This document shows positions 11,017-24,662 of a stretch of DNA of 64,000 nt, in pieces (positions within the stretch are counted from its first letter, which is position 1; each line of letters starts with the position of its first letter). Where the stretch lies: positions 1,085,378-1,149,377 of the forward strand of contig BDGG01000014.1 of assembly GCA_001949185.1 (NCBI GenBank), written 5' to 3'. Position numbers and translations under genes: made by a program. The DNA is from Ramazzottius varieornatus. Lineage: Eukaryota; Animalia; Tardigrada. The notes under the pieces are model-generated. The model was not told where the DNA came from. It did no database searches and was given only the letters and a program-made list of their open reading frames with translations.

Positions 11017-13521
11017 ATGGCGAAGAATGGCGCTACTTACCAACAAGGTGATCTAATTTTGTCGGAAGATCCCTGGGTTTATACGGTGCTGAGCGGGGAA
11101 GTCGACTTCCGCTGCTACCACTGCTTGCGTCTTCTGGCTTCAGCTGATTCCTCCTCTCCACTCCTCAACAAGGGCAACCGATGCTCCGCATGCAAATATG
11201 CCCGATACTGCTCCGTGGAATGCCAGGTTAGTGAGCAGATTTTCACATGCGGAGGAATGGTGGAAAGAGGATTTTTCCCGATGGAGGATAACTAAATTCC
11301 GTACTTGTACGGTTTGAACTGGTCGGGCCACCATACAGGCTGTTTGGCCGATGTTATGGCAAGCGCGGGGCCGCAGAATTGATCGAAAATTACCATATTT
11401 CCAGAAAATCTTTCTTCCTAGCTTGTCGTCGTTTCGGCACCGCTTATGAAACAGTTCATCTCTGGCTAATGTTCCTACGCTTGAGAGGCCTCCCCACAAA
11501 TTCGATGTTCTATCTGTGTTGCAGAAGAAGGATTGGAAAGAACGGCACAAAGCCGAGTGCTTCATGCTGAAACTTGGAGGAGCTTCCAGCGTCCGACCAC
11601 CTGTACACTTCCTCCTCATGCTCAAAATCCTCAACAAGCTGAAAGTAAGTCGTCAACAGTTTTTCTCGAGGTCGATCAAAATCTGTTATACCGTAAGGAA
11701 CGTCTTTGAAAGAGAGGGCACTAAAATCTGATGGAGTGTGAGATTTGGCACAGGAAAGATTCCGGGCCGTAAACGTCCACCGGGTCAGTTCACGCCACTT
11801 CAAACCTGCGGCCCGGTCTAAATTTACGGAATGTCAGGTTGCGTGCGTCGCTTTGTTAAAGTGATATCTATCTTCTTTTCAGACAAATTTCGACGATCTG
11901 ATGAGCAGTAAATCCCCTTCCTCGTTGCAAAAGAAGCGCAAGACTCGAACGTACATCGATTTGGTGTCGCATGCCGAGGAACTATGGAATACTCCGGGGA
12001 TAATGGAGTACATCACGCAAGTGCGCATCATGCTGGGCAAATACCTGGCCATCGAGAACGACGCCGAACTTCCCTACGTCCAAGATGTCCTTCAGATGTT
12101 CGGCAAGATTAAATGCAATGGCTTCGGTATCACAGACGATAGTATGAGTTCCTGCGGTGTCGGTGAGGAATTGAACATATTATAATGGACTATCACAGAG
12201 TGAAAAATTCTGGTCGTTTCAGGAATTTATCTGGAGGGTTCGGCCTTGGACCATTCCTGCTCGCCCAACGCCTGCCAAGTCTTCCAAGGCCCACGCTTAA
12301 CCATTCGAGCGACGAAAGCTATCCATGGCGGTATGAAGAACGTCCGCATCGCTTACATCGACGTTTTCGTCCCCAAGGAGGTCAGGCTGAAACGTCTGAT
12401 GGACGGATACCTCTTTGAATGCACTTGTCCCCGATGCCTCGATGACACCCAGCAGGTAAGAGTCAGCTCGTCCTTCTTTTCACAAAGCGTGAAGCGGTTG
12501 CTCGCAAAACGAACTGGGCTTTCCCGATGGCGCACATTCGTTACTAGCTGGAAGCCTGCGCCACTTGGAAAAATAAGCCTGTCGATTTCCCAAGTGACGC
12601 TCTTCGCCATGTTGTTTGATGGAAGCGTGCGCCATGTGGGAAAACCTTCTGGCCGCGTTTGTTTGTCGAGCTTTGGAACAACAAGTGGTTATTGTCTAGA
12701 AGGACGCGGAAATGTTTAGCATCAAATGTGAATCTCCCAAGTGCGCTCTGGCTGTTCCCTCGGACGAACGCGCCGAAGCTCCGTGCAAGTGTGGCCACAA
12801 GCCGAAGAATGGGGAAGTACGGCTGGACCGCTACGACCTTCTGCTGGAAGAGCTTCTACAGCGTGTCGACCGCTTTGACCAAGAGGGTGTGGGCTGTGAG
12901 TTCGACGAGAAGCAGTGGAAGGAAGACGAGACGTTCCTCCATCGGATGGAAGACCTCCTTCATCCAAACAACCCTCTCCTGGCCTGCTTCTACTCCATGA
13001 TGGGCCGCATGCTACTTTCTTGGGGCTGTGAAACAGCACCGCAGTATTTCGCCAAAGCGGCGTACATTTACAGGTAAGTCTCCCTTTTTGTTTTTTCGTA
13101 CGCTTGCATACAGTATAGTCATCCGTTTTCTCGACGACCGAGTATGCAGGTGCTTGAGGTCATGTTGGTCGCTGGCCTGGCATGCACCTGCATGCTTTCG
13201 TCCGCTTGTATACGGACACTATGTATGCAGGTGTATGAAAGCGTAGACTGTCCACTGAAGTTCGTTTGGCTGAGCGGATTTTCTTGCAGAGTGTGGATGC
13301 CAGCCCCTGCTGTAGATCCAGTAATGGGTTATGCTTTCCTCCAAGCTGTGGAGCGCGATCCAGCCGTTGGTGAGCCCTTGGATTCCTTCAAGCGCCTGAT
13401 CGAAGCCGAGAAGATCCTCCGCTTTACGCACAGCAAAGATCACAGTTTGTATCGTGAAGCTCATGCAGCGCTACGCTTAGCCGCCATCACTGTCAACAAG
13501 ATATGCTCACGTAATGTCTAA
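11017..13521 (+). CDS. SET and MYND domain lysine methyltransferase (SMYD family), multi-exon
   Basis: MYND finger CYHC...CSACKYARYCSVECQ|KKDWKERHKAEC. SET motif GIYLEGSALDHSCSPNA, YID, and post-SET YLFECTCPRC. Confidence 0.92.
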
Positions 13522-14047: not shown

Positions 14048-16000
14048 CTAGGACAAAATCAATTCTGGAAGACGAGTCGAGGAAGTCTGCGGCGTGGTGG
14101 TCTTGCTGGACAAGTCAGATCCGGTGGTCGGCGTATCCGACTGCAGCGCCGAAGCAGCTTGGGCGGCTGCAGCCTTCTCCGCCGCCAAGCGCTTCCTCCT
14201 TTCCCGTTCCTTCTGCTGAATCCTGACCAGCTTCTGTACAGCTGCCTTGGTTGGCTGGTTGAGCGGAGCCGTTGCTGTTGGAGGCGGTGGTGGGATGGCT
14301 CGTGTGGGATCGTAGGTTGGAATGGAGACTAGGTTCAAGGGTGTGTAGCCCACAGGACAGCCACTCATCAGCAGAGGCGGCGGATCGACCATAGCCGGTA
14401 CCACAATCATGTTCTCCACACTAGTCTCGTCAGGCGGCTTCTGTAAGCCCAAGTAAGGCACCATGATAATCATCCTCTCGGGCGTGTAGTAAGGCCAACA
14501 CAGCACGGCCCCCACACCGTCCAACGTGAAGGGCACCGGAAAGGCCCCCATCACTGTCTCACTAACGATGGGAAAACCTGTCTCTTTGTCGGGAGTTAGG
14601 TACTTTTCAATTTCGTTTAGCAATACAGAGGGATCGGGCAGAGAATCAGTAATACTATCTTGCGAAGATGGATTGTCAGCGTCGACCGTTGTGATCGACT
14701 TGCGAGGAGAGAGAACGGTCTTGATCGGGCTGGCCGTTGGAGTTTGGGCTTTCTCGTCGGGGTTGGTTTGCTCTTCCTTGCTGCTCTTGTTGTCCCATCG
14801 GGCTTTGAACGGAATCTTCTTTTTACTGGGTGTTTCGGGTTTGGAATTGCGGGATGGCGAACGCGGTTCGGAACGGTCGCGTTTCCTTGGAGTGGAGAAT
14901 TTGGACCTTGGTCGTTGCGTAGGACTAGGTGAACGTGAACGAGTCCTACTGCGGTCTTTAGTGCGAGTAGGCGGCCGAGAAGCACTCCTACTGCGTTGGC
15001 GTACTCGAGTGGGGCTCTTCGTCCGACTGCGGCGTTTCGCTAGAATAGGACTACGGGTCCTACTCCGGTCGTCTCGCCGTTTGCTCTTCACTGGTGAACG
15101 GGATTCACTCCTACTGGACGACCGCTGTCTTGACCGCATCGGACTGCGACTTCTACTACGTTGTTTGGTGCGGGTAGGCGTTCGGGACCTGCTTTTGCTG
15201 CGCGACCGGAAGTAACTTCGTCGACTAGAAGAGATTAACTTCTCACTGTAGACTTTCCGAGCAGGCTCTGGTTTCTTACGATCATGCCGTGGACGCGGAG
15301 AGTAGCTAGTAGAGCGTCGACGAGGTGTGCGAGTACTCGAACGACGTCGTGGAGTCCTGGAGCGCGAACGCGACCGTCTTGACCGTTCATATCGTTGCTT
15401 GGACGCAACGGGACTTCTGGACCGTGAGCGGCTTCTGGGTCTCTTTCGTTCCACCGGACTAGGCGAAAGCCTTCTGGCGAACCTTAGCTTGAAGGATGGC
15501 GAAGCAGATTTGGGTTTCTGGTGTACTGGACTTTCTGGCGAAGGCTTGTCCACTTCCTTTTCGGTGCCGACTTTCTTCACTTCTTCCAGTTTCTCTTCTG
15601 GCCTTTCTTCTACCTTGACTTCGGCACCCTGCACTGGTTTCTGCTTAATGGACGACCTAAACAGCTCCAGCTGCTTTTCCAGTTCATCGACCGAAGGCTC
15701 TGGCTCAGGTGGTGGAGACAGAGAAGGGATTGAGGCAGAAGGAGTCACTTCCAGTACGGGTTTGAGTTGATTGATTTTTTGGACGCTGTCGACAGGGTCT
15801 TCTTCCGTCTTGATCGTCACTTCGGTCTTCTCGGCTTCCGTCGGCGACAAACGTCCAAAGACTGAAGCAGCAGAGTGAGCAGCATCCTTCTTCAAGGCTC
15901 CAGCTGCAATACAGAAGGTAAGCTTGGGTTTGCCGAGAGCGAATTTAATCGGAGCTTTGGCTTTATCTTTCGTCGGACGGAAAAATCCGTTGGAATCCAT
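14048..16000 (-). CDS. Intronless 650-aa arginine/serine-rich (RS) protein, family not recognised
   Basis: Long ORF with central RSRSRS tracts and a Pro-rich C-terminal part; no RRM recognised. Confidence 0.75.
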   Translation of the reverse strand: MDSNGFFRPTKDKAKAPIKFALGKPKLTFCIAAGALKKDAAHSAASVFGRLSPTEAEKTEVTIKTEEDPVDSVQKINQLKPVLEVTPSASIPSLSPPPEPEPSVDELEKQLELFRSSIKQKPVQGAEVKVEERPEEKLEEVKKVGTEKEVDKPSPESPVHQKPKSASPSFKLRFARRLSPSPVERKRPRSRSRSRSPVASKQRYERSRRSRSRSRTPRRRSSTRTPRRRSTSYSPRPRHDRKKPEPARKVYSEKLISSSRRSYFRSRSKSRSRTPTRTKQRSRSRSPMRSRQRSSSRSESRSPVKSKRRDDRSRTRSPILAKRRSRTKSPTRVRQRSRSASRPPTRTKDRSRTRSRSPSPTQRPRSKFSTPRKRDRSEPRSPSRNSKPETPSKKKIPFKARWDNKSSKEEQTNPDEKAQTPTASPIKTVLSPRKSITTVDADNPSSQDSITDSLPDPSVLLNEIEKYLTPDKETGFPIVSETVMGAFPVPFTLDGVGAVLCWPYYTPERMIIMVPYLGLQKPPDETSVENMIVVPAMVDPPPLLMSGCPVGYTPLNLVSIPTYDPTRAIPPPPPTATAPLNQPTKAAVQKLVRIQQKERERRKRLAAEKAAAAQAASALQSDTPTTGSDLSSKTTTPQTSSTRLPELILS

Positions 16001-16505: not shown

Positions 16506-16910
16506 CATATAAACAAAGGCTTGCTATGCTTTGCCTTTACCGTCGAAATGTCTTCAAGGGTTTGCGAACTATGCCTTCAACGTGTCTTCGCTGCATATTG
16601 ACTAAAACTAGCTCAACCAAATACCACGCCACCGAACACCGTACCCGCACATCGCTACTTGATTATTCGATTTCCTTTTTTCCGCACGGTAACCGCTGAC
16701 TGGGCGACATACCGTGAGATTTCACGAATTCCCCGCTTCTCCGTATCTCTTCGATTCATGATTCTTCGAAGTTTTGACACCTGCCGTAACCTGCGAAATC
16801 AAAAGCCATCTTCATCACAAGTTGCTGCCTGGAACATCCCCTCCCATTGTGCGGACAATCACTGTTTGTCGGTTGAGTGGAAAAAGCGTGTCGTTCTGTT
16901 TTACAGCGCC

Positions 16911-19220
16911 ATGGACAAGACACCGACGTGCAGTGCCCCTTCACACGGAAGCATCCCTCCGCCGATCATGACCATCAACCCTGCTCCCAGCACAACAAAC
17001 AGAAACATGAAGAAGGAGCTGAACGACCACACAGAAATGCGTCTCGAAGATTTCATGAAGAAATTCAGCATAGGTACGTCTCTAGAAAACCTCCGATTGA
17101 TGATCACCCAGATCAAGTCGCGCATAATCTCGACCCAAACGAAGTTGCGGAAAGAGGTCGGCAGCTGGTCACAGCTTCGCACTTTCAGTGTCGAATCAGT
17201 TCTTTCTCCCGACTGCTTTTGCTGATTACTGGTGCTTGTATTGCAGGTGACGATGTATGGGTCATCAGTAAGGGACAGTGGCACGAAGCTAAGATCATTC
17301 TGATCGAAATGTACAAGTATCTCGGAGATGAGACGACATCCGTGCCCATCTACAGAATCCATTACCCGGGTTGGGGAAAACGGTAAGCAGGCTCCGACAT
17401 CCATCGGATGCGGCAGAAGGAAGATGTCTGATGCGTTCTCCTCTTCAGGTGTGACGAGTGGATGTGCAGCGATTCGCTGATGTTACAGAACACAGAGATC
17501 AACGCCAAGGCCTCGGCCGAAAACGGCGCCTTGATGGAGGCCAGGTATAAACTCTGGGGAAAAATTCTCGTTTGTTTTCCCCGGATAGACTTATGCACTA
17601 CGTTGCGTGATGTTTAATTTTGCAGTGGAATCAAGAGTATGAAGACCGGAAAGAGAACGGCCCAGGCAGACAAGACCAGTTCTTTGCAGATGACGGCGAA
17701 AAAAGCCAGTGTCAAAGCTCCAATCCTGTGCCTATCAACGGAGTATCTCCCGCCAGAGGCCGAGGAAAAGGTGGAAGCAGAGGAGGCGCGACTGCCGAAC
17801 CTAGGGGTAACTTCAAAAAATATTACCTCTAGTGCCGAAGCAGTCGAAGTAATGCGCGAGTTCAACCGAACATTCCGGTAGTGTACCTTGACTTTCGAAT
17901 GTCTGGAAAATAATTTATGCTGCATGTTCATCCCATTGAATTTTCCATTGAATTTCGCTCACAGGATATTCATTTTCGATATTTTTCCAGGTACGACGAG
18001 CAGTAAACAAGCGAGAATTGATGCAGGACTGTCTGCGGGAGATAATATTTCAGCTGCGGGCTGTCAGTCGCTGGAGCCTCCCAGCATGGCTTCAGCGCTC
18101 GAAAGCGAGCCGACCACCTTGACCGACAACGGAAAAGCGCACAGCTTAGAGCCAGCCAGTTCATCTGAGAAGTCGATTAACCGACTGGAAAACTCATCCA
18201 GTATCAAGAAAACCGAAAGAGCGAAGAACACTGGTGCGAGGAAAAAGGTGCCAGCCGGTGAGAGCTATTTATTACGGTTCGAAAACCGCAGCGATGACGG
18301 AAAATCCAGCACAGGCTATTACGTGTTTGCTTGTTTTTCAATTAGCCATGACCGAAATGCTACCTGTGGGCACCATCGTTACAGCCGTTCCTGCTGGAAG
18401 TCCTGCCGGAACTCCAGGTCAGCATTTCATGGTCCAAAGCAAGGTGGAGAACGGTAAGATCGTCCCCTTCCTGGTGCCCGTCCAACAAGTTACCGAGGTG
18501 GAAGAAACTGTTCCCGAAGGTTCGTACCGTAGTTTCAAGTAACAGGGCTGGATTGTAGTTATTTCTCTGTAACGGGTGCTGGCATTGCATGAACGGTCTG
18601 TACAGGCCGGCGAAGTGGTTACTGTACGAGCCGGGGAAGTGGTTGCTGTACAGGCCGGCGAAGTGGTTACTGTACGAGCCGGGGAAGTGGTCACTGTACG
18701 GGCCGTCCGAGTTGTCTGCATACAAGCCAGCGGATTAACGCAGATCCGCGAGATTCTACTGTTATCTGAGATAACTATGTTTCAATGACAAAGTTGGTTA
18801 CGTGATCTGTTCTATAGGTACAGTGACTATGGATATGCTTGAGCAAGAACACTCACCAACCGAAAAACCACGGAAGATGCCACGGAAGGAGAAGGATGTT
18901 CTTACTAAGATTCGCCGACAATGGTAAGAGGCTTTTAAGAGACATACGGTTTTGGTTCTTTGCAGATGAAATATCATGAATGTCATGACTTGTATTCTGT
19001 TTAGGGTTATGGGCAACTTCCGGAAAGCGAAATTCTGCGACCTGTCAAACAGTGGGATTAGTACCTTTTTCGCCAGGTACTGTTTTCAGTATTGCAGATG
19101 CATTTTGCAGTGGAAACTGAGCTGTCCAGTGAGATACGTGGAAGCGTCTTGTGTTGGCTTTTGGATGTTGAGTCTTTACACAGCGATTGTTCATGTGATA
19201 AAGACGCATTCGAGGTAACG
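16911..19220 (+). CDS. Transposon-borne chromo-barrel (Tudor-knot) domain protein, multi-exon; 3' end uncertain
   Basis: Spliced exons 16911-17073, 17247-17382 and 17449-17544 give KKFSIGDDVWVISKGQWHEAKII...YRIHYPGWGKRCDEWM, a MRG15/MSL3/Esa1-type chromo-barrel. Further phase-compatible exons run to ~19076. No MRG domain follows. Confidence 0.75.
18600..18706 (+). repeat. 24-bp minisatellite (GTACAGGCCGGCGAAGTGGTTACT) x~4.5 with 48-bp higher-order pattern, intronic
   Basis: Tandem units read directly, alternating caggccggcg / cgagccgggg variants. Confidence 0.95.
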
Positions 19221-22200
19221 CAATAACACCGTCGCCACCATTCTAGAAATCTTGCTCTGTGTGAGTGACGAGTATGTCAAAATTCGCAGGTCTTTCGGCA
19301 AACAAAGTTCGGCACCCGGGGCATTGGTAACCCATACCAGGATTCGGATATTTCTTGACGACAAACTTGTGGGTACTGTCACGCCATGGTCTACCTAGAA
19401 GAAACAAGTATGTTGTCCCAGACATGGTAGTCTAAATTCATGCATGGTCACTACGCCGGCGTGTACATCAGTAGGGACAACTACGCCAGCGTCTCCTTTG
19501 CTAACACTGACGGCATCTATGGAGGTTGACCAATTTTGCAACTCTCGCTCTTGTAACAGTATCCTTCTTCCTCGAAGTTCATTTCGACAGCTTCCTTGCC
19601 TTTACAGGTTGTGTAACCGGATCCACTCAGATTCTTCATCTTTCGCCCAACCTTGTGACCACCAACACTTCGCACGAGCCAGCTGCCGGAGGGACGCAAA
19701 TTCTTCTCTAATTTCAGCCATTCCACCATCTGCACCAAGTTTCCGGTCGCCGCGGTCACGGCAATGATATGTTTGCAAGCTGGGTCTTTATTCTGAGTGA
19801 ACTGCAAACAACCGCATTTACCTTCCCCGGAAGTAGTGCGGATCTCGACGAAGTACCAGCAGGGCTTCTTCTTGTCTGTAGACCGAACTTTCCGAACGAC
19901 CGAGGAGTTCCATTTTCGTTTATAATGGGTCGTTTCTTCCGCGGAAAGCTCAACCATCCAGCCTTCGTCAGCAGGGCCGCCCATAAGCTCCACGGCCTTG
20001 TCCCAGCTAACGCGAAACATGTCGGGAAGTCCGGTGGTGGCAAAGTCCGTCAGCACATTGGACGGTCTTGATCCATCTCCCGACGAATCGACCTATAAAC
20101 ATAATGTCACAGTTACAGACTAGCACTATGTACCTGTTCTACTATTAGACGAACCAACAAGACTTCACCGGCACAAAGCGCGGCAGCTCTGCCCGCGTAG
20201 GCTTTGGCAACTCCGACGGCGGACAATGCAGCATCTTCGCCAACAAAACGTACTAACACCACCGGCCTACTTGCAACAACTCCGCTGGTACTAACTTTTC
20301 GACTCGATGCAACGACAACCATGGTGTTCACGTTGCACTTGGAGGACAACCGTTGCACTTTGGACATTATGTGGGTATTGTCGTGCGCTTTCTGTCGCGA
20401 CAAGAGAAGGTCTTCTCTGTACTGCTCGGCTATTCTGTATCGGCCTTGATCTTTCAGGGCCTGGAACATGAACACAGTTTCATCGGCGTACATCTTGAGC
20501 AATCTCTCAACCACTTCCCGGGGATCGTTGTGCGTGCCAAAAAAGGCTCTGAGCGTTTTGTTCATGGCCTCGGACAGATTAGTATTAGGAAGGTCGCGCG
20601 AGAAACCCATCTTTTCACGTGCCGGTAGGATTAGTTTCTCGACAAAGTTCTTCTGATGGTGTTTTTCAAACCAGTGCTGGAATTTGTCATCGCCCAAAGA
20701 GCTCTTCACCTCTTTCCACTTTTGGAGATACTGCTCTTCCGAAACTGAATCTACAAGCCCTAGAACATGCTTCCTCACACCAGCTACGTTGCGGTGGTAC
20801 CCCAGTACACAGTTCAGCACGAACGACACATGGGAAGAGGGTACGGGCTTTCAGAGGAAGTATCTCTTGATACCATCTCGGATGCGTAGAACGCAGAGCG
20901 TATGGTTGTGTCGAGGGAAAGCTTCGCGGAATGCTTCGTACAGTGCTCGCTCGCCATCGATGATGAAATCGAAGCTGAAGTCTTTTGACATCACATCGAC
21001 ACCTGCATTCACAAGACATTCTCGGAGGTAATTAGCGAACACCGACAACGAAGCTTTCGACTTCCTCTGAGTTAGGCATGTTGGTCCGATCAGCAAAGCA
21101 GGCTTTCCTGTCTTCTCATTCACAAAATAAGAATGTTGGATGACTATGACCACCAGATACATGTTGCACAGCTGGAAAGTCAAATCGATCTGCAAGCGAA
21201 GCTTCACTGCAAACACAAAACCAAAGGATTAATACCCCATTCAGGCGCGCATCACTACAAGACGAAAATAAGCTCAGTCTACAGTGCCTGTTGATAAGGC
21301 GACCGACAATATTACCGGCTTGCACTTCAAGAATTCCGTCAAATGTACACTGACAACTCTACCGGCCTATGAACGAACTACTCCACTGGCATGTAGATTA
21401 CCAAAACTGCCGGTGTTTACAGCAGAAACATCGCTGGCGTGTACTTTGTCAAGATTGCCGGAATAGGCAATCGCTCTGACCTTAATCGACTTACACTTTA
21501 GCTTTTGGTCGCCGTTCGTCGCTATCAGTCCAACGTGGTACGGATCTACCACGACGAAATTCTCAGATTTCGATCCATCCTCGTTCTGGTACTGACGAAG
21601 AATGACCCCTTCCTTCCTTCGCAGGTAGCTTTCCACGTCTTCTCCGTATGTGTTCTCGTTGACTGTGTTTCTGATGGTCATGACCTGTCGCATATCTTTC
21701 GGTCCATAATATGGGTTCACCTCGCGGTCGATTTCGGGTATAGTTGACGCAACTTCGAGAACGATGTCTCTAGGGCTCATGGGCTTGCCGCGTGCAACAG
21801 ATGACGCTAGCTTCTTGATCGCGCTTGTGATGGTTTTCCCTGGTGTAGGTTTTCCCAGGCGGGAATGGTGCGATCTTGCTTTCGTCGGACCATACATACT
21901 GGATCACGAAGAAATTCTCGACTGGCTTGCTGCAGCCCTCTGACGACACAATTGCAAGAAGACGTCGCTTGAAGCCATTGGGCTTCCCATTAGGTCGACT
22001 GTACCAGTCCTTCTTCATTGGATAAGAACGGCGTCTGGTCGTCATCATGCTTGCTACCACTACCAAACCGTTCATTTGATTCTCTCCAGCTGCCGTTCCC
22101 GTCGTCCAGAATTAGTCCGTAGATCCGTTCTCTCTGCTCGGGCCGGAAGGAAACGGCAAACCACGCTTGACCTTGGAAGCGCTGAGGTATTCGGTGATGT

Positions 22201-23445
22201 TTGTACGCATCAAGGACTTCTGGATTACAAAGCCAGGCGAGAACTGACGCATCGCTTTCCACCGTTTGGAAACAACGATAATGATTATCTCTGCAGAAAG
22301 CAATATGATGTGAGTTAGATTTCACTACGTTGACAACTCCGTCGGCGCGCACACCAGCATCCTCATCGGCTCATACAACGGCATCTTCACCGGTTCATAC
22401 AGTAACAACTCTGCCGGCATGTATTGAAAAGAAGCAGCTTGACTCACATCTCATAACATGGTCCCAGAGCGCTGTCCGCCACGGGAGCTCCTAAGGCAAG
22501 ATTTCCACGTACAGAAAATGTAACCACTGGCTGAGATAATCGTTTTGGCTCATGTTCTGATACAGAAAACGACGTCTCCCTGCAACAGGTAAGTGATCCA
22601 GTTAACGCTGGAGTCACTTGTGCGCTGCTCATAATCCCGACTACTTACGGGGTAACGCACATGTGCACTGGCTCATTAGCGCTGCTCTGCGTGGAGGCGC
22701 CGGTGATAGCTGATGCGTCGTCGTCGTCGTCGTCACTTTCCAACATATATACAACCGACTTACCAGCATTCTTCACCGAAGAGTCTTTGAAGTTTGCAAA
22801 TTTCCTGAAATAACCAATCGATATATTGCTTGCAATGAATATCGCATTTGTGGACTACATAGTGCAAATAAACCACACAAACACCGTACATAACGTCATC
22901 TCAATCGGCGAGTACGGCATGTACACGGATTTCGCCGGCGTGTGGTCTGCCGTCTCCACCGGCGCGTATAATGACAACTGAGACGATATGATACGGACTT
23001 CGCCGGTTTGTGCAGTGGCATCTCCGCCGGCGTGTAAAGTGATAACTTCGACGAAGACAACTTATACTTCGACGAAGACAGCTTATACGAAGACAACTTC
23101 GCCGGCGTGAACATTTGCAGGTCCAGCGGTTTATAAGTGTTTTTGAAATACGTTGGAAAGTTTGAAAACGTACCTTCCAACTCCAGAAGAGGTGCTCGGA
23201 ATATTATGATCGTCGTCGATGACAGAATTCATAGTCAGTTCGTCCGAATCGTCTTGGTTGTCCCATTCCGCGTCGAAAGCGCTTGTAGAACGATCGGGGA
23301 GTATATCTTGACTGATGTCCTCAGTTTTCAGGCGTTTGACACCCCCACTGCAGCCACTGCTGTTGGGCGAACCAGATGGGAAGATACCATCGAACACTAT
23401 CTCGTTGTCGTCATCCTCATCCGAAATAGACGGTGAGTGTTCCAT
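19045..23445 (-). pseudogene. MULE transposase with SWIM zinc finger, spliced, disrupted by frameshifts and stops
   Basis: IDLTF (D1), IIDGERALYEAFREAFP..LCVLR (D2; CxxH reads CVLR), TNLSEAMN (E), SWIM CGC...CKHIIAV, C-terminal CPGC...H...YH..C. In-frame TGA at 20851 and TAG at 19243; frame changes around 22000 and 21850. Confidence 0.85.
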
Positions 23446-23810
23446 GGCGAGGTGGCAGCGAAAGTCAAAACAGATCCAGGAAGAAAGCGAGGAGAAAGGC
23501 GGAAACAAGTGAAAAATAAATTTTCTTGCGTTGCAAACCCAAGCAACTGGCTTGGCCGTGGCCGCTATTTCGGCTGCGGCGTTTCAGTATGCTGAGCGTA
23601 CGTCGTTGTGAGGGGTACGAGTTACGGTGCGGTGTTACGATTATTTTTCGAAATTGTGGTGCAGTACGGTTACGAGTTTAGTAGTTGTCTGGATACGTTG
23701 AAGGTTATACTGAAGGCAAAATTCGCAAACCCCCGAAGACATTTTGACGGTAAAGTGCTGCGAAGGCAAAGCATAGCAAGCCATGAACAAAACAGAAAAA
23801 ATCAGCACAA

Positions 23811-23957
23811 GCACGACGAAAAATTATGGGGCCAGTAAAAATTATGGGACCAGTCCTTTTCCTTACAGCGGTACGGAAGCACGTACGTACACCACCGATT
23901 CATAGTAATGCACTTTTTGCCGTCTTTTCCGCCTGGTCCCATAATTTCCTGTCGTGC
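23811..23957. mobile_element. Small inverted-repeat element (MITE-like)
   Basis: gcacgacgaaaaattatggggccag (plus tandem copy aaaaattatgggaccag) pairs with ctggtcccataatttcctgtcgtgc at 23933-23957. Confidence 0.6.
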
Positions 23958-24284
23958 GTGTAGCCCTAAAAGAATCAGCGTATTTCTTCGTAAAAAGTTA
24001 GATCACGACTTGATTTTCCCACCTTTGGCGTATCTGCTGCTGGGTATTCTAACTATTCTTCACCAGTCTATAGTACGAGGGCTGCTAACGGTAAGTCAGT
24101 CCGCATTTTGGCACGCCGTTTGTTTTCAGCACGCGAAGTCTTGCAGCTCTACAGTAGGTCCGGATCAGCTCAAGGAACTTTAACTTTGCCAATTCATTGG
24201 CAGTCTCTGACACTTCTGCAAAGTTGATGACTGCTTGTCTCTTTTGTGGTGTCGAACAAGCAGCCTGATCCCTGCGGTAAACAG

Positions 24285-24662
24285 ATGAGCGACAGTTCTA
24301 AATCTCCTACGGCATCTGAGGCGACGGACATGAGCACGTCATCTTCGACCAGCAACGCTGGATGGCTCAACGAGCGCAGTTTGTCTGCCGTCCTTCACGA
24401 CCAACGGGAAATGCTGAGCAAGCTGGAGAAGGCAAACGAAACGCTGGAAACTTGCAACTCTCTCAGTGCTCAAAGATTAGAGACTTACGTCCCAGAGTTC
24501 AGGCAGCACGTCAAGCTATTGGGTGACACCAAAAAGGACCTGGATTCCGTTTATCGACGTCTTCGTTTAATCCAAGCCAAAATTTCAAAGTTATATCCCA
24601 AAGAATACGCCGAAGCTAGAAACAAGGCGGAAATGAGCGAGGAACCGGAGGATGAAGAATAA
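24285..24662 (+). CDS. KXD1: KxDL motif-containing protein 1 (BORC subunit)
   Basis: QREMLSKLEKANETLETCNSLSAQRL...HVKLLGDTKKDLDSVYRRLRLIQAKISKLYP matches the KxDL family pattern. Confidence 0.88.
   Translation: MSDSSKSPTASEATDMSTSSSTSNAGWLNERSLSAVLHDQREMLSKLEKANETLETCNSLSAQRLETYVPEFRQHVKLLGDTKKDLDSVYRRLRLIQAKISKLYPKEYAEARNKAEMSEEPEDEE

What the first reader, a model, noticed from the sequence alone, without database searches (positions are those of the whole stretch)
16518..23782. Two-gene Mutator-like transposon carrying a chromo-barrel 'reader' accessory gene
Seen: TIRs (outer 18 bp identical, ~70 bp alignable with short insertions on the right) and a 9-bp TSD (8/9) enclose a minus-strand MULE-DDE/SWIM transposase and a convergent plus-strand spliced gene with a chromo-barrel domain. 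Established: 9-bp TSDs are typical of Mutator; maize MuDR has convergent mudrA/mudrB; Arabidopsis VANDAL MULEs encode VANC accessory anti-silencing proteins; chromoviruses use chromodomains for targeting. Inference: this is an animal MULE family whose accessory protein reads histone methyl marks or nucleic acid to steer insertion or counter silencing. I do not know of a described animal MULE with this cargo.
Basis: partly seen in the sequence, partly recalled or inferred. Interest (0 to 1): 0.9.

Follow-up and report, generated by a model that had tools for sequence, protein, structure and literature searches.

The report
Tardigrade Mutator transposon with chromo-barrel gene
This is a broken copy of a jumping gene (Mutator type) of the tardigrade Ramazzottius varieornatus whose family carries, besides its transposase, a second conserved gene for a protein with a histone-mark-reader fold, which suggests the transposon brings its own chromatin-binding helper.

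Summary
Inverted ends (20 nt exact, about 65 nt alignable) and a 9-bp target duplication (8/9) enclose a minus-strand MULE DDE/SWIM transposase and a convergent, spliced plus-strand gene. That gene's product passes Pfam Tudor-knot, and its model matches the MSL3 and MRG15 chromo-barrels.

The genome is Ramazzottius varieornatus. It has about 13 elements. Nine were checked, and each has its own 9-bp duplication.

The second gene is not a one-off capture:
- It sits in the same convergent position in two TIR-related families. Their transposases differ at a nonsynonymous distance (dN) of about 0.3.
- By coordinates it also sits there in a third, deeper lineage (about 40% transposase identity).
- Between families dN/dS is 0.13-0.33, while copy-specific changes are neutral (0.99).

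The window copy itself is dead. It has a 4-bp deletion in accessory exon 4 and a 1.5-kb deletion that removes the 3' ends of both genes. The transposase also has two frameshifts and a stop.

Exons 1-5 of the accessory gene, with their introns, are 79% identical to a stand-alone gene, RvY_18288, which appears to continue into an MRG-like domain. The direction of exchange is unresolved. Function (targeting or anti-silencing) is inferred, not shown.

First readers, and one follow-up agent of this scan, noted the same element type on other pieces of this genome.

The parts
16509..16517 (.). left target-site duplication ATAAACAAA
16518..16579 (+). left TIR (20 nt exact, then 45 nt at 89%; lacks 8 nt present in the right arm and in other copies)
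16911..17073 (+). accessory gene exon 1 (ATG; conserved MRLEDF motif)
   Evidence: conserved donor and acceptor in the cross-family alignment; matches P0001; splice sites
17247..17382 (+). accessory exon 2: first part of the chromo-barrel
17449..17544 (+). accessory exon 3: second part of the chromo-barrel (CDEWM; Y instead of C in all other copies) and start of the C-terminal helix
17626..17806 (+). accessory exon 4 (RGG box); 4-bp deletion unique to this copy at 17711/17712 shifts the frame
   Evidence: donor joint 17806/17991 in run X4
17991..18257 (+). accessory exon 5 (Ser/Thr/Pro-rich linker)
   Evidence: GT..AG joints in run X4; P0017
18346..18519 (+). accessory exon 6
   Evidence: GT..AG joints in run X4
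18598..18705 (.). 24-bp minisatellite (4.5 units) inside accessory intron 6
18818..18923 (+). accessory exon 7a
   Evidence: joints; splice sites
19005..19076 (+). accessory exon 7b; its donor splices to an exon that is missing from this copy
   Evidence: loose end at 19078 in X4 matches the extra DNA of the C2 copies
19159..19160 (.). junction of a 1,541-bp internal deletion (relative to copy C2a) that removes the last two accessory exons and about 33 codons of the transposase C-terminus
19160..19431 (-). transposase C-terminal exon(s), truncated
   Evidence: conserved in minus frames across families
19520..20080 (-). transposase exon with SWIM zinc finger (CxC...CxH)
   Evidence: P0025
20116..21216 (-). 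transposase DDE core exon (second D and E motifs); in-frame TGA at 20851-20853, open in copy C2a
21370..22370 (-). transposase upstream exon, broken into three frames by two 1-nt insertions unique to this copy (about 21840 and 22019)
   Evidence: X4 contig lacks the base at 21840
22925..23088 (.). tandem repeats (periods 68 and 21) in the first transposase intron, related in inverted orientation to the 24-bp minisatellite
23134..23445 (-). transposase exon 1 (acidic N-terminus; ATG at 23445-23443); exon end approximate
23711..23782 (-). right TIR
23783..23791 (.). right target-site duplication ATGAACAAA

Best explanation
The stretch is one dead copy (7,265 bp) of a low-copy Mutator-like (MULE) DNA transposon family of Ramazzottius varieornatus. 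The most complete copy seen (C2a, 8,765 bp, itself with lesions) shows the full layout: two convergent, intron-containing genes between roughly 60-80-bp TIRs. One gene is a DDE/SWIM transposase. The other has about 10 exons and encodes a conserved N-terminal motif, an MSL3/MRG15-type chromo-barrel, an RGG box, a low-complexity linker and a lysine-rich tail. It has no MRG domain. Shown: the second gene is an integral part of the element, has been kept in the same place in at least two (by coordinates three) diverged MULE lineages, evolved under purifying selection while the lineages were active, and is transcribed and spliced. Inferred: the protein serves the transposon as a chromatin-binding cofactor. 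The barrel would dock on methyl-lysine-marked nucleosomes (the fold that reads H3K36me3 in MRG15/Eaf3 and H4K20me1 in MSL3), and the RGG and lysine-rich parts would hold nucleic acid. My preferred version (about 35%) is that it tethers the transposition complex or the element to permissive, gene-associated chromatin and so biases where the element lands. The alternative that it shields the element from silencing is listed as a rival. The 5' half of the gene shares a recent DNA-level ancestor with the stand-alone gene RvY_18288.
For: - Element boundaries and mobility: TIRs, and nine independent 9-bp TSDs.
- Transposase identity. D, D and E motifs are visible in P0022, P0023 and P0027.
- Barrel identity: Pfam above cut-off on P0001, P0002, P0003, P0006 and P0017. 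AF2 model plus Foldseek top hits 3ob9, 2f5k and 3oa6, TMt 0.75-0.87.
- Same convergent two-gene layout within TIRs in the G-type family: L031 at 7,548 bp and L032 at 6,667 bp.
- Third lineage: barrel and transposase hits lie 2-6 kb apart and convergent at C19:285.8-288.9 kb and C5:1647-1653 kb.
- Selection: dN/dS is 0.13-0.33 between families against 0.99 for 54 copy-specific substitutions.
- The conserved last exon ends in SVDRAVRY(F/L)MSL in both families. The annotated model P0006 joins the barrel to that tail.
- Expression: GT..AG joints 17806/17991, 18257/18346 and 18519/18818 in run X4, and a SMART cDNA oligo in X1.
- Three of four aromatic-cage positions are aromatic in the family: HY, GW and Y/W before DEW (alignments).
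- This copy lies in the ~1-kb (pre-insertion) spacer between two divergently oriented ORFs, a gene-proximal site.
Against: - No binding or transposition data exist.
- The cage tyrosine of MRG15/MSL3/Eaf3 (YEAK/YDAK) is histidine here (WHEAK/WHKAK), so methyl-lysine reading is not assured.
- Every C-type copy examined has lesions in the accessory gene. These are a stop in C2a, a 23-nt deletion in C2b, deletions in C4d, C7d, C9 and C4b, and a 4-bp deletion here. No currently active element is demonstrated.
- The 5' half is shared with RvY_18288, so part of the apparent constraint could come from exchange with a selected host gene.
- Outside this genome only one Hypsibius exemplaris protein and a few unnamed ENA proteins share the barrel type. 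Their genomic context could not be checked.
- The dN/dS estimates rest on tblastn-selected, hence conserved, segments.
Confidence: 0.6

Rival explanations
1. Anti-silencing or decoy factor. Because it has the barrel but lacks the MRG domain that links MRG15/MSL3/Eaf3 to their enzyme complexes, the protein would compete with host readers (for example Rpd3S-type deacetylase recruitment) on the element's own chromatin and keep the convergently transcribed element expressed. This would be functionally analogous to VANC of Arabidopsis VANDAL elements.
For: The barrel is present and the MRG domain is absent in all transposon-borne versions. The stand-alone relative RvY_18288 seems to have an MRG-like C-terminus. 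Convergent transcription from both ends is a layout prone to antisense silencing. Purifying selection fits this as well as it fits targeting.
Against: There is no evidence of competition or of any effect on silencing. The MRG assignment of RvY_18288 rests on one language-model/structure look-up only: Pfam is silent and my AF2 model was unusable. Nothing distinguishes this from the targeting model.
Confidence: 0.22
2. Passenger transduplicate. The 5' half of a host chromo-barrel gene was captured, Pack-MULE fashion, and is carried and transcribed without benefit to the transposon. Its conservation would reflect recency or repeated gene conversion with the host gene.
For: The family does capture host DNA: copy C2b carries a Sec7 fragment (Pfam 1.2e-16) that is 88-89% identical to a gene at C2:7.34 Mb. 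Exons 1-5 plus introns are 79% identical to RvY_18288. RvY_18288 sits on a very short branch at the base of the transposon copies in the tree.
Against: The gene is retained at the same position, with transposon-specific 3' exons that RvY_18288 lacks, in families whose transposases are saturated at silent sites, and by coordinates in a still deeper lineage. dN/dS is 0.13-0.33 between families against 0.99 within a family. The barrel (78% amino-acid identity) is better conserved than the transposase (45-66%).
Confidence: 0.12
3. A host gene that merely lies next to a transposase gene, so that the inverted repeats are coincidental.
For: None beyond the existence of the stand-alone paralogue on C18.
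Against: Nine elements at different loci carry the gene inside TIRs flanked by their own 9-bp duplications. No TIR lies near the C18 gene.
Confidence: 0.01

Closest known systems
MuDR of maize (mudrA transposase + mudrB)
   Same: Mutator superfamily. TIRs and 9-bp TSD. Two convergently transcribed genes, each starting near one end. A second gene that is not the transposase (layout as summarised in PMC6446971).
   Different: MURB is not known to have a chromo-barrel (my knowledge; no mudrB sequence was compared here). MuDR is from a plant and this element from an animal. TIRs here are about 60-80 bp against about 215 bp. Both genes here have many introns.
VANDAL21/Hiun of Arabidopsis (vanA, vanB, vanC)
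   Same: A MULE with accessory ORFs, one of which (VANC) acts on the element's own chromatin state (PMC6446971).
   Different: The proteins are unrelated. VANC is an anti-silencing DNA-binding factor, and no reader fold is described for it. No function has been tested here.
Chromoviruses (Ty3/gypsy with integrase chromodomain, e.g. MAGGY) and DNA-transposon/Chromo or PHD fusions catalogued by Grau-Bove et al. (bioRxiv 10.1101/2021.11.30.470311)
   Same: A mobile element that carries a chromatin-reader module. Tethering to marked chromatin is the accepted role for MAGGY.
   Different: Here it is a separate gene, of the chromo-barrel (Tudor-knot) type, in a MULE. Neither MULE nor MuDR is mentioned in that paper's text, and its only Tudor-knot mention concerns KAT5.
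MSL3 / MRG15 / Eaf3 host chromo-barrel proteins
   Same: Barrel fold with C-terminal helix (rmsd 1.5-2.2 A). HYxGWxxxxDEW signature. Pfam Tudor-knot and MSL3_chromo-like hits.
   Different: No MRG domain in the transposon protein. The cage Tyr is replaced by His. It has an added RGG box and lysine-rich tail. It is encoded inside a transposon.
Pack-MULEs / Pack-TIRs (PMC8277862 for animals)
   Same: The shared 5' half with RvY_18288 fits gene-fragment capture (direction unresolved). A clear example is the Sec7 fragment in copy C2b.
   Different: Pack-MULEs are non-autonomous and their cargo usually decays. Here the cargo travels with the transposase and is under purifying selection.

Membership tests
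Mutator-like elements (MULE superfamily) | Terminal inverted repeats | tested here: met
   20 nt exact plus 45 nt at 89%. The same termini bound 7 copies. The related G-type TIRs are 78-79 nt.
Mutator-like elements (MULE superfamily) | Target-site duplication of 8-11 bp, typically 9 bp | tested here: met
   9 bp in all nine elements checked, seven of them perfect.
Mutator-like elements (MULE superfamily) | DDE transposase recognised by the MULE domain model PF10551 | tested here: inconclusive
   Hits in the window exon piece, in two exon ORFs of other copies and in four annotated proteins. E-values are 9e-6 to 9e-3, covering up to positions 4-98 of 99, but the best score is 26.5 bits against the cut-off of 27.6. 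The feature search gives MULE transposase clusters as all top hits, best 0.94. D, D and E motifs are visible.
Mutator-like elements (MULE superfamily) | SWIM zinc finger downstream of the catalytic core (common, not universal) | tested here: inconclusive
   PF04434 scores 14.9 bits against a cut-off of 19.6. The CxC...CxH pattern is present in P0025. UniRef names P0023, P0025 and P0026 SWIM-type.
MuDR-type two-gene MULE | Second gene convergent with the transposase, each gene starting near a TIR | tested here: met
MuDR-type two-gene MULE | Second gene homologous to mudrB | not tested
   No mudrB sequence was available through the tools. The product here is a Tudor-knot protein.
Chromo-barrel (Tudor-knot) readers | Sequence match to PF11717 above the curated cut-off | tested here: met
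   27.6-32.3 bits in P0001, P0002, P0003, P0006 and P0017 against a cut-off of 20.8.
Chromo-barrel (Tudor-knot) readers | Barrel fold with C-terminal helix | tested here: met
   Model pLDDT 85-95 over residues 51-130. Foldseek hits to MSL3, MRG15, MRG701 and Eaf3 at E 4e-6 to 1e-4.
Chromo-barrel (Tudor-knot) readers | Complete aromatic cage for methyl-lysine | tested here: inconclusive
   By alignment, three positions are aromatic. The Tyr of YEAK/YDAK is His. The window copy also has Cys where all other copies have Tyr. Residue roles are from my knowledge of MRG15/MSL3 structures.
MRG15/MSL3/Eaf3 family proper | MRG domain C-terminal to the barrel | tested here: not met
   No MRG hit in P0001, P0006, P0014 or P0017 even at E up to 10. 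Only the stand-alone RvY_18288 shows an MRG-like C-terminus, and only by the Atlas look-up.
Pack-MULE | Non-autonomous element without a transposase gene | tested here: not met
   The family encodes a transposase in the same elements.

The most novel reading that the evidence does not exclude
A clade of tardigrade MULEs has long carried its own trans-acting histone-mark reader. This chromo-barrel/RGG/lysine-rich protein would direct integration to marked, gene-associated chromatin. The clade has also exchanged exons with a host MSL3/MRG-like gene (RvY_18288). That would be two-way traffic between a DNA transposon and a chromatin-reader gene family.
Probability: 0.25. Interest if true: 0.8.

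Novelty: new variant of a known kind. Interest (0 to 1): 0.6.

Why it matters
Accessory genes of DNA transposons are rare and poorly understood; mudrB still has no clear biochemical role. Here the accessory protein has a recognisable and testable fold, a chromo-barrel of the MSL3/MRG15 type, and it shows the evolutionary signature of a gene that serves the element. If it reads histone marks, it would be a DNA-transposon counterpart of the chromoviral chromodomain or of the LEDGF-integrase tether, but encoded as a separate gene. Its kinship with a stand-alone barrel gene also gives a concrete case for studying exon exchange between transposons and chromatin genes in an animal. The particular copy in the window is a dead relic. 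The interest lies in the family.

Tried and rejected
- Complex prediction: the G-type transposase fragment P0023 with the accessory protein P0006 (residues 36-319) returned 'no answer'. It is not used as evidence either way.
- AF2 of RvY_18288 without an alignment: mean pLDDT 37, unusable, so no fold search was run on it.
- Pfam MRG on RvY_18288 at E up to 10, and PF05712 over the genome: silent. The second search rang nowhere, including the controls, so it is uninformative.
- A search for relatives of the RvY_18288 C-terminus found only the protein itself.
- The transposase searches found only R. varieornatus proteins and one unnamed ENA protein. So there is no placement among the named MULE clades and no linkage evidence in Hypsibius.
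The C19, C5:1.647 Mb, C10 and C25 elements are therefore known by coordinates only.
- The joints 18255>19897 and 20131>21306 in the RNA contigs looked like alternative splicing of the transposase, but they are the two genomic deletions of the C7 copy.
- I first read a stop in accessory exon 7. This was a frame error, resolved by the small intron 18924-19004.
- The protein tree of the barrel region (13 rows trimmed to the barrel region; unaligned inserts of P0005 and P0016 removed) left the position of RvY_18288 unresolved.
The penultimate exon looks mostly low-complexity with one short conserved motif.
- I submitted no hand-joined spliced model to any search or fold tool. Exons were searched by reference, and spliced products were taken from database proteins.
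Full report
**1. The observation**

Positions 16518-16537 and 23763-23782 are a perfect 20-nt inverted repeat. After an 8-nt indel a further 45 nt pair at 89%. The nine bases outside the two ends are ATAAACAAA and ATGAACAAA.

The terminal 20-mer, with two degenerate positions and up to one mismatch, occurs 26 times in the genome. Its reversed control occurs 0 times.

On the minus strand, exon-sized ORFs give MULE and SWIM Pfam hits. On the plus strand, one ORF gives a Tudor-knot hit. All are below threshold at this stage because the domains are split by introns.

**2. Organism and copies**

An exact look-up shows that the window's own annotated proteins are RvY_16976 (accessory gene, P0001) and RvY_16978 (transposase fragment, P0025) of Ramazzottius varieornatus.

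A DNA search of the 55.8-Mb assembly found six further copies with the same TIR type, which I call C-type:
- Two long copies on C2, here C2a and C2b.
- Two copies on C9 and C4 that share a deletion of window 17579-19691.
- Two other internally deleted copies, on C7 and C4.

Each of the seven copies has its own 9-bp target duplication, five of them perfect. Excluding indels, identity is about 96.5-97% within a subgroup and about 90.5% between the two subgroups.

A second family (G-type) has TIRs that begin GGCTTGGTATGC, against GGCTTGCTATGC here. Its elements of 7,548 and 6,667 bp on C5 also have 9-bp duplications, 9/9 and 8/9.

**3. Gene models**

*Exon structure.* A cross-family alignment shows conserved splice sites for accessory exons 1-4. 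RNA-derived contigs of run X4 show GT..AG joints at 17806/17991, 18257/18346 and 18519/18818. Run X1 carries a SMART cDNA oligo. All exon borders have canonical GT/AG. The database proteins P0001, P0017 and P0006 are spliced the same way.

*The window copy is incomplete.* An X4 contig leaves the window at 19078 and continues with sequence that is found only in the two C2 copies. Those copies have 1.5-2.5 kb more at window position 19159/19160. That extra DNA holds a penultimate exon with a conserved LSPxG..FL.L motif, and a last exon with a lysine-rich tail ending in SVDRAVRY(F/L)MSL. Both are shared with the G-type family.

*Reference layout.* It is therefore C2a (8,765 bp): a gene of about 10 exons for N-terminal motif, barrel, RGG box, linker and lysine-rich tail, convergent with the transposase. 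C2a itself carries lesions (section 4).

*The transposase.* It has an acidic first exon, a long upstream exon, a DDE core exon, a SWIM exon and a C-terminal exon.

**4. State of the window copy**

It is dead in both genes.
- Accessory gene: a 4-bp deletion at 17711/17712 that no other copy has, a Cys where all others have Tyr before DEW, and loss of the last two exons through the 1,541-bp deletion.
- Transposase: two 1-nt insertions unique to this copy near 21840 and 22019, an in-frame TGA at 20851-20853 where C2a is open, and loss of about 33 C-terminal codons.

The other copies have their own lesions:
- C2a has a stop in barrel exon 2, an in-frame 15-nt deletion in exon 4, and 4 nt missing from the penultimate exon relative to C2b, which shifts its frame.
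- C2b has a 23-nt deletion in exon 4.
- C9 and C4b have stops and share a 2.1-kb deletion.
- C7d and C4d have large internal deletions.

**5. What the two proteins are**

*Transposase.* The MULE domain scores 16.9-26.5 bits in several independent proteins and exon ORFs, against a cut-off of 27.6, and covers up to positions 4-98 of 99. The SWIM pattern is present. A feature search returns only MULE and ZSWIM clusters, best 0.94. Together with the TIRs and 9-bp duplications this makes the superfamily assignment safe, although the curated Pfam threshold is narrowly missed.

*Accessory protein.*
- The spliced products pass Tudor-knot at 27.6-32.3 bits against 20.8. P0006 and the Hypsibius protein P0014 also pass MSL3_chromo-like.
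- The AF2 model of P0001 has pLDDT 85-95 over residues 51-130, forming a barrel plus a C-terminal helix.
- The best solved matches are the human MSL3 and MRG15 chromo-barrels, rice MRG701 and yeast Eaf3, with rmsd 1.5-2.2 A over about 83 residues for the MSL3, MRG15 and MRG701 barrels.
- In alignments to MRG2, MSL3 and Eaf3 the HYxGWxxx(Y)DEW signature is kept, but the Tyr of YEAK/YDAK is His.
- No MRG domain is detectable.

**6. Is the gene part of the transposon?**

Yes. Four lines of evidence agree.
- The G-type elements have the same order and orientation inside their TIRs.
- A third and much deeper lineage shows barrel exons and transposase exons (about 40% identity to P0023) lying 2-6 kb apart and convergent, at C19:285.8-288.9 kb and at C5:1647-1653 kb. 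These loci could not be fetched.
- Between families, the conserved part of the accessory gene (exons 1-4) has dN/dS of 0.13-0.17 against G-type copies and 0.33 against the C18 gene. The transposase is saturated at silent sites with dN of about 0.3.
- Within the C-type family, 54 copy-specific substitutions are 12 synonymous to 42 non-synonymous, a ratio of 0.99 per site.

This is the classic pattern of a gene selected in the active lineage and decaying neutrally after insertion.

**7. The stand-alone relative**

RvY_18288 (P0002, 633 aa) on C18 matches the element only from 14 nt before the ATG to mid exon 5. That is 1.23 kb at 79% identity, introns included. No TIR or transposase lies nearby, and its C-terminal 370 residues are single-copy in the genome.

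The Atlas look-up places that C-terminus with MRG domains: features 0.88 with 177-182 shared, and structure TM 0.81 by target over residues 367-563. Pfam is silent and my own model failed. I treat the MRG assignment as a lead.

Neutral sites (introns) put the C18 segment closer to the C-type family (65-82% identity) than the two transposon families are to each other (48-69%). C18 also has the shortest branch. In the protein tree it sits unresolved at the base. So a DNA-level exchange between the C18 locus and the transposon lineage happened after the families had begun to diverge. Its direction is open.

**8. Distribution**

A profile of the barrel exon, searched against 1.84 billion representatives, found only 15 proteins: R. 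varieornatus models, one Hypsibius exemplaris protein (OQV17236.1, barrel plus Lys/Ala-rich regions, no MRG), a few unnamed ENA proteins, and one weak, apparently unrelated repeat protein (P0013).

**9. Mechanism**

*Shown:* mobility, gene content, selection, transcription and the fold.

*Inferred:* the protein is a chromatin-binding cofactor of the element. I favour tethering or targeting (about 35%) over anti-silencing (about 22%) and over a neutral passenger (about 12%). My reasons for preferring targeting are that the barrel is combined with nucleic-acid-binding-type segments, that reader modules on other mobile elements act in targeting, and that this copy sits in the spacer between two divergent ORFs. 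That last point is a single case. None of these arguments is decisive.

**10. Known or new**

MULEs with extra ORFs are known: mudrB, vanB/vanC, mutB and an unknown second ORF in MULE-Co (PMC6446971). Transposons that recruit Chromo or PHD readers are also known, as fusions. My full-text searches found no MULE, and no DNA transposon, with a separate chromo-barrel gene. A 2026 survey of arthropod MULEs mentions no accessory or second ORF and no chromo-type domain. I therefore rate it a new variant of a known kind.

The same element type was noted by first readers on other pieces of this genome. One follow-up agent (s1-789745) reached essentially the same reading. My analysis was done before I saw those notes.

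**11. Limits**

- I handed no hand-joined spliced model to any tool.
- The one RNA look used assembled contigs of runs whose RNA nature is a guess, apart from the SMART oligo and the splice joints.

Noticed in passing
L038:4044-4823 (copy C2b, G000:C2:5301095-5310839): This copy alone carries about 1.1 kb more, with a 259-aa ORF that hits the Pfam Sec7 domain (1.2e-16). The DNA is 88-89% identical to two separate stretches of a gene at C2:7338813-7343254. This looks like a Pack-MULE-style capture of a host ArfGEF fragment by an element that still has its transposase.
   Followed up: partly
L035:2278-5420 (G000:C18, RvY_18288, P0002): A stand-alone 633-aa gene whose first five exons and introns are 79% identical to the transposon's accessory gene. 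Its single-copy C-terminus resembles an MRG domain by the Atlas look-up only. It is either the donor of the transposon gene or a host gene that took up transposon exons.
   Followed up: partly
window 18598-18705 and 22925-23088: A 24-bp minisatellite lies in accessory intron 6. Related tandem repeats lie in the first transposase intron, in inverted orientation on the + strand, so they are in the same sense relative to each gene (inverted-repeat pairs I1 and I3). Their role is unknown. Transposase-binding sites or small-RNA sources are untested ideas.
   Followed up: partly
window 14048-16000 (-) and 24246-24662 (+): The element sits in what was a spacer of about 1 kb between two divergently oriented ORFs: a 650-aa Arg/Ser-rich protein on the minus strand and a 138-aa ORF on the plus strand. 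This is a shared 5' region, the kind of site Mutator elements are known to favour.
   Followed up: no
G000:C19:285817-289121; G000:C5:1647081-1653503; G000:C10:1307745-1308315: These are deeply diverged barrel exons (RvY_18532 type, about 55% identical in exon 2). At C19 and C5 they lie beside a convergent MULE transposase of about 40% identity. No transposase hit was listed near the C10 copy.
   Followed up: partly
L011/L008 (G000:C7:1620212-1624670): This doubly deleted copy lacks window 18258-19896 and 20134-21305. Its two deletion joints appear in contigs of run X4, and the 20131>21306 joint also in X3, so this non-autonomous copy appears to be transcribed.
   Followed up: partly
window 23807-23961: Just right of the element there are short inverted repeats around AAATTATGGG(G/A)CCAG (pairs I4 and I13). 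They may be a small foldback or MITE-like remnant.
   Followed up: no
window 12246-13077: ORFs with a SET-domain C-terminal signature (…HSCSPNA… and …FECTCPRC…), probably exons of a SMYD-like methyltransferase gene.
   Followed up: no
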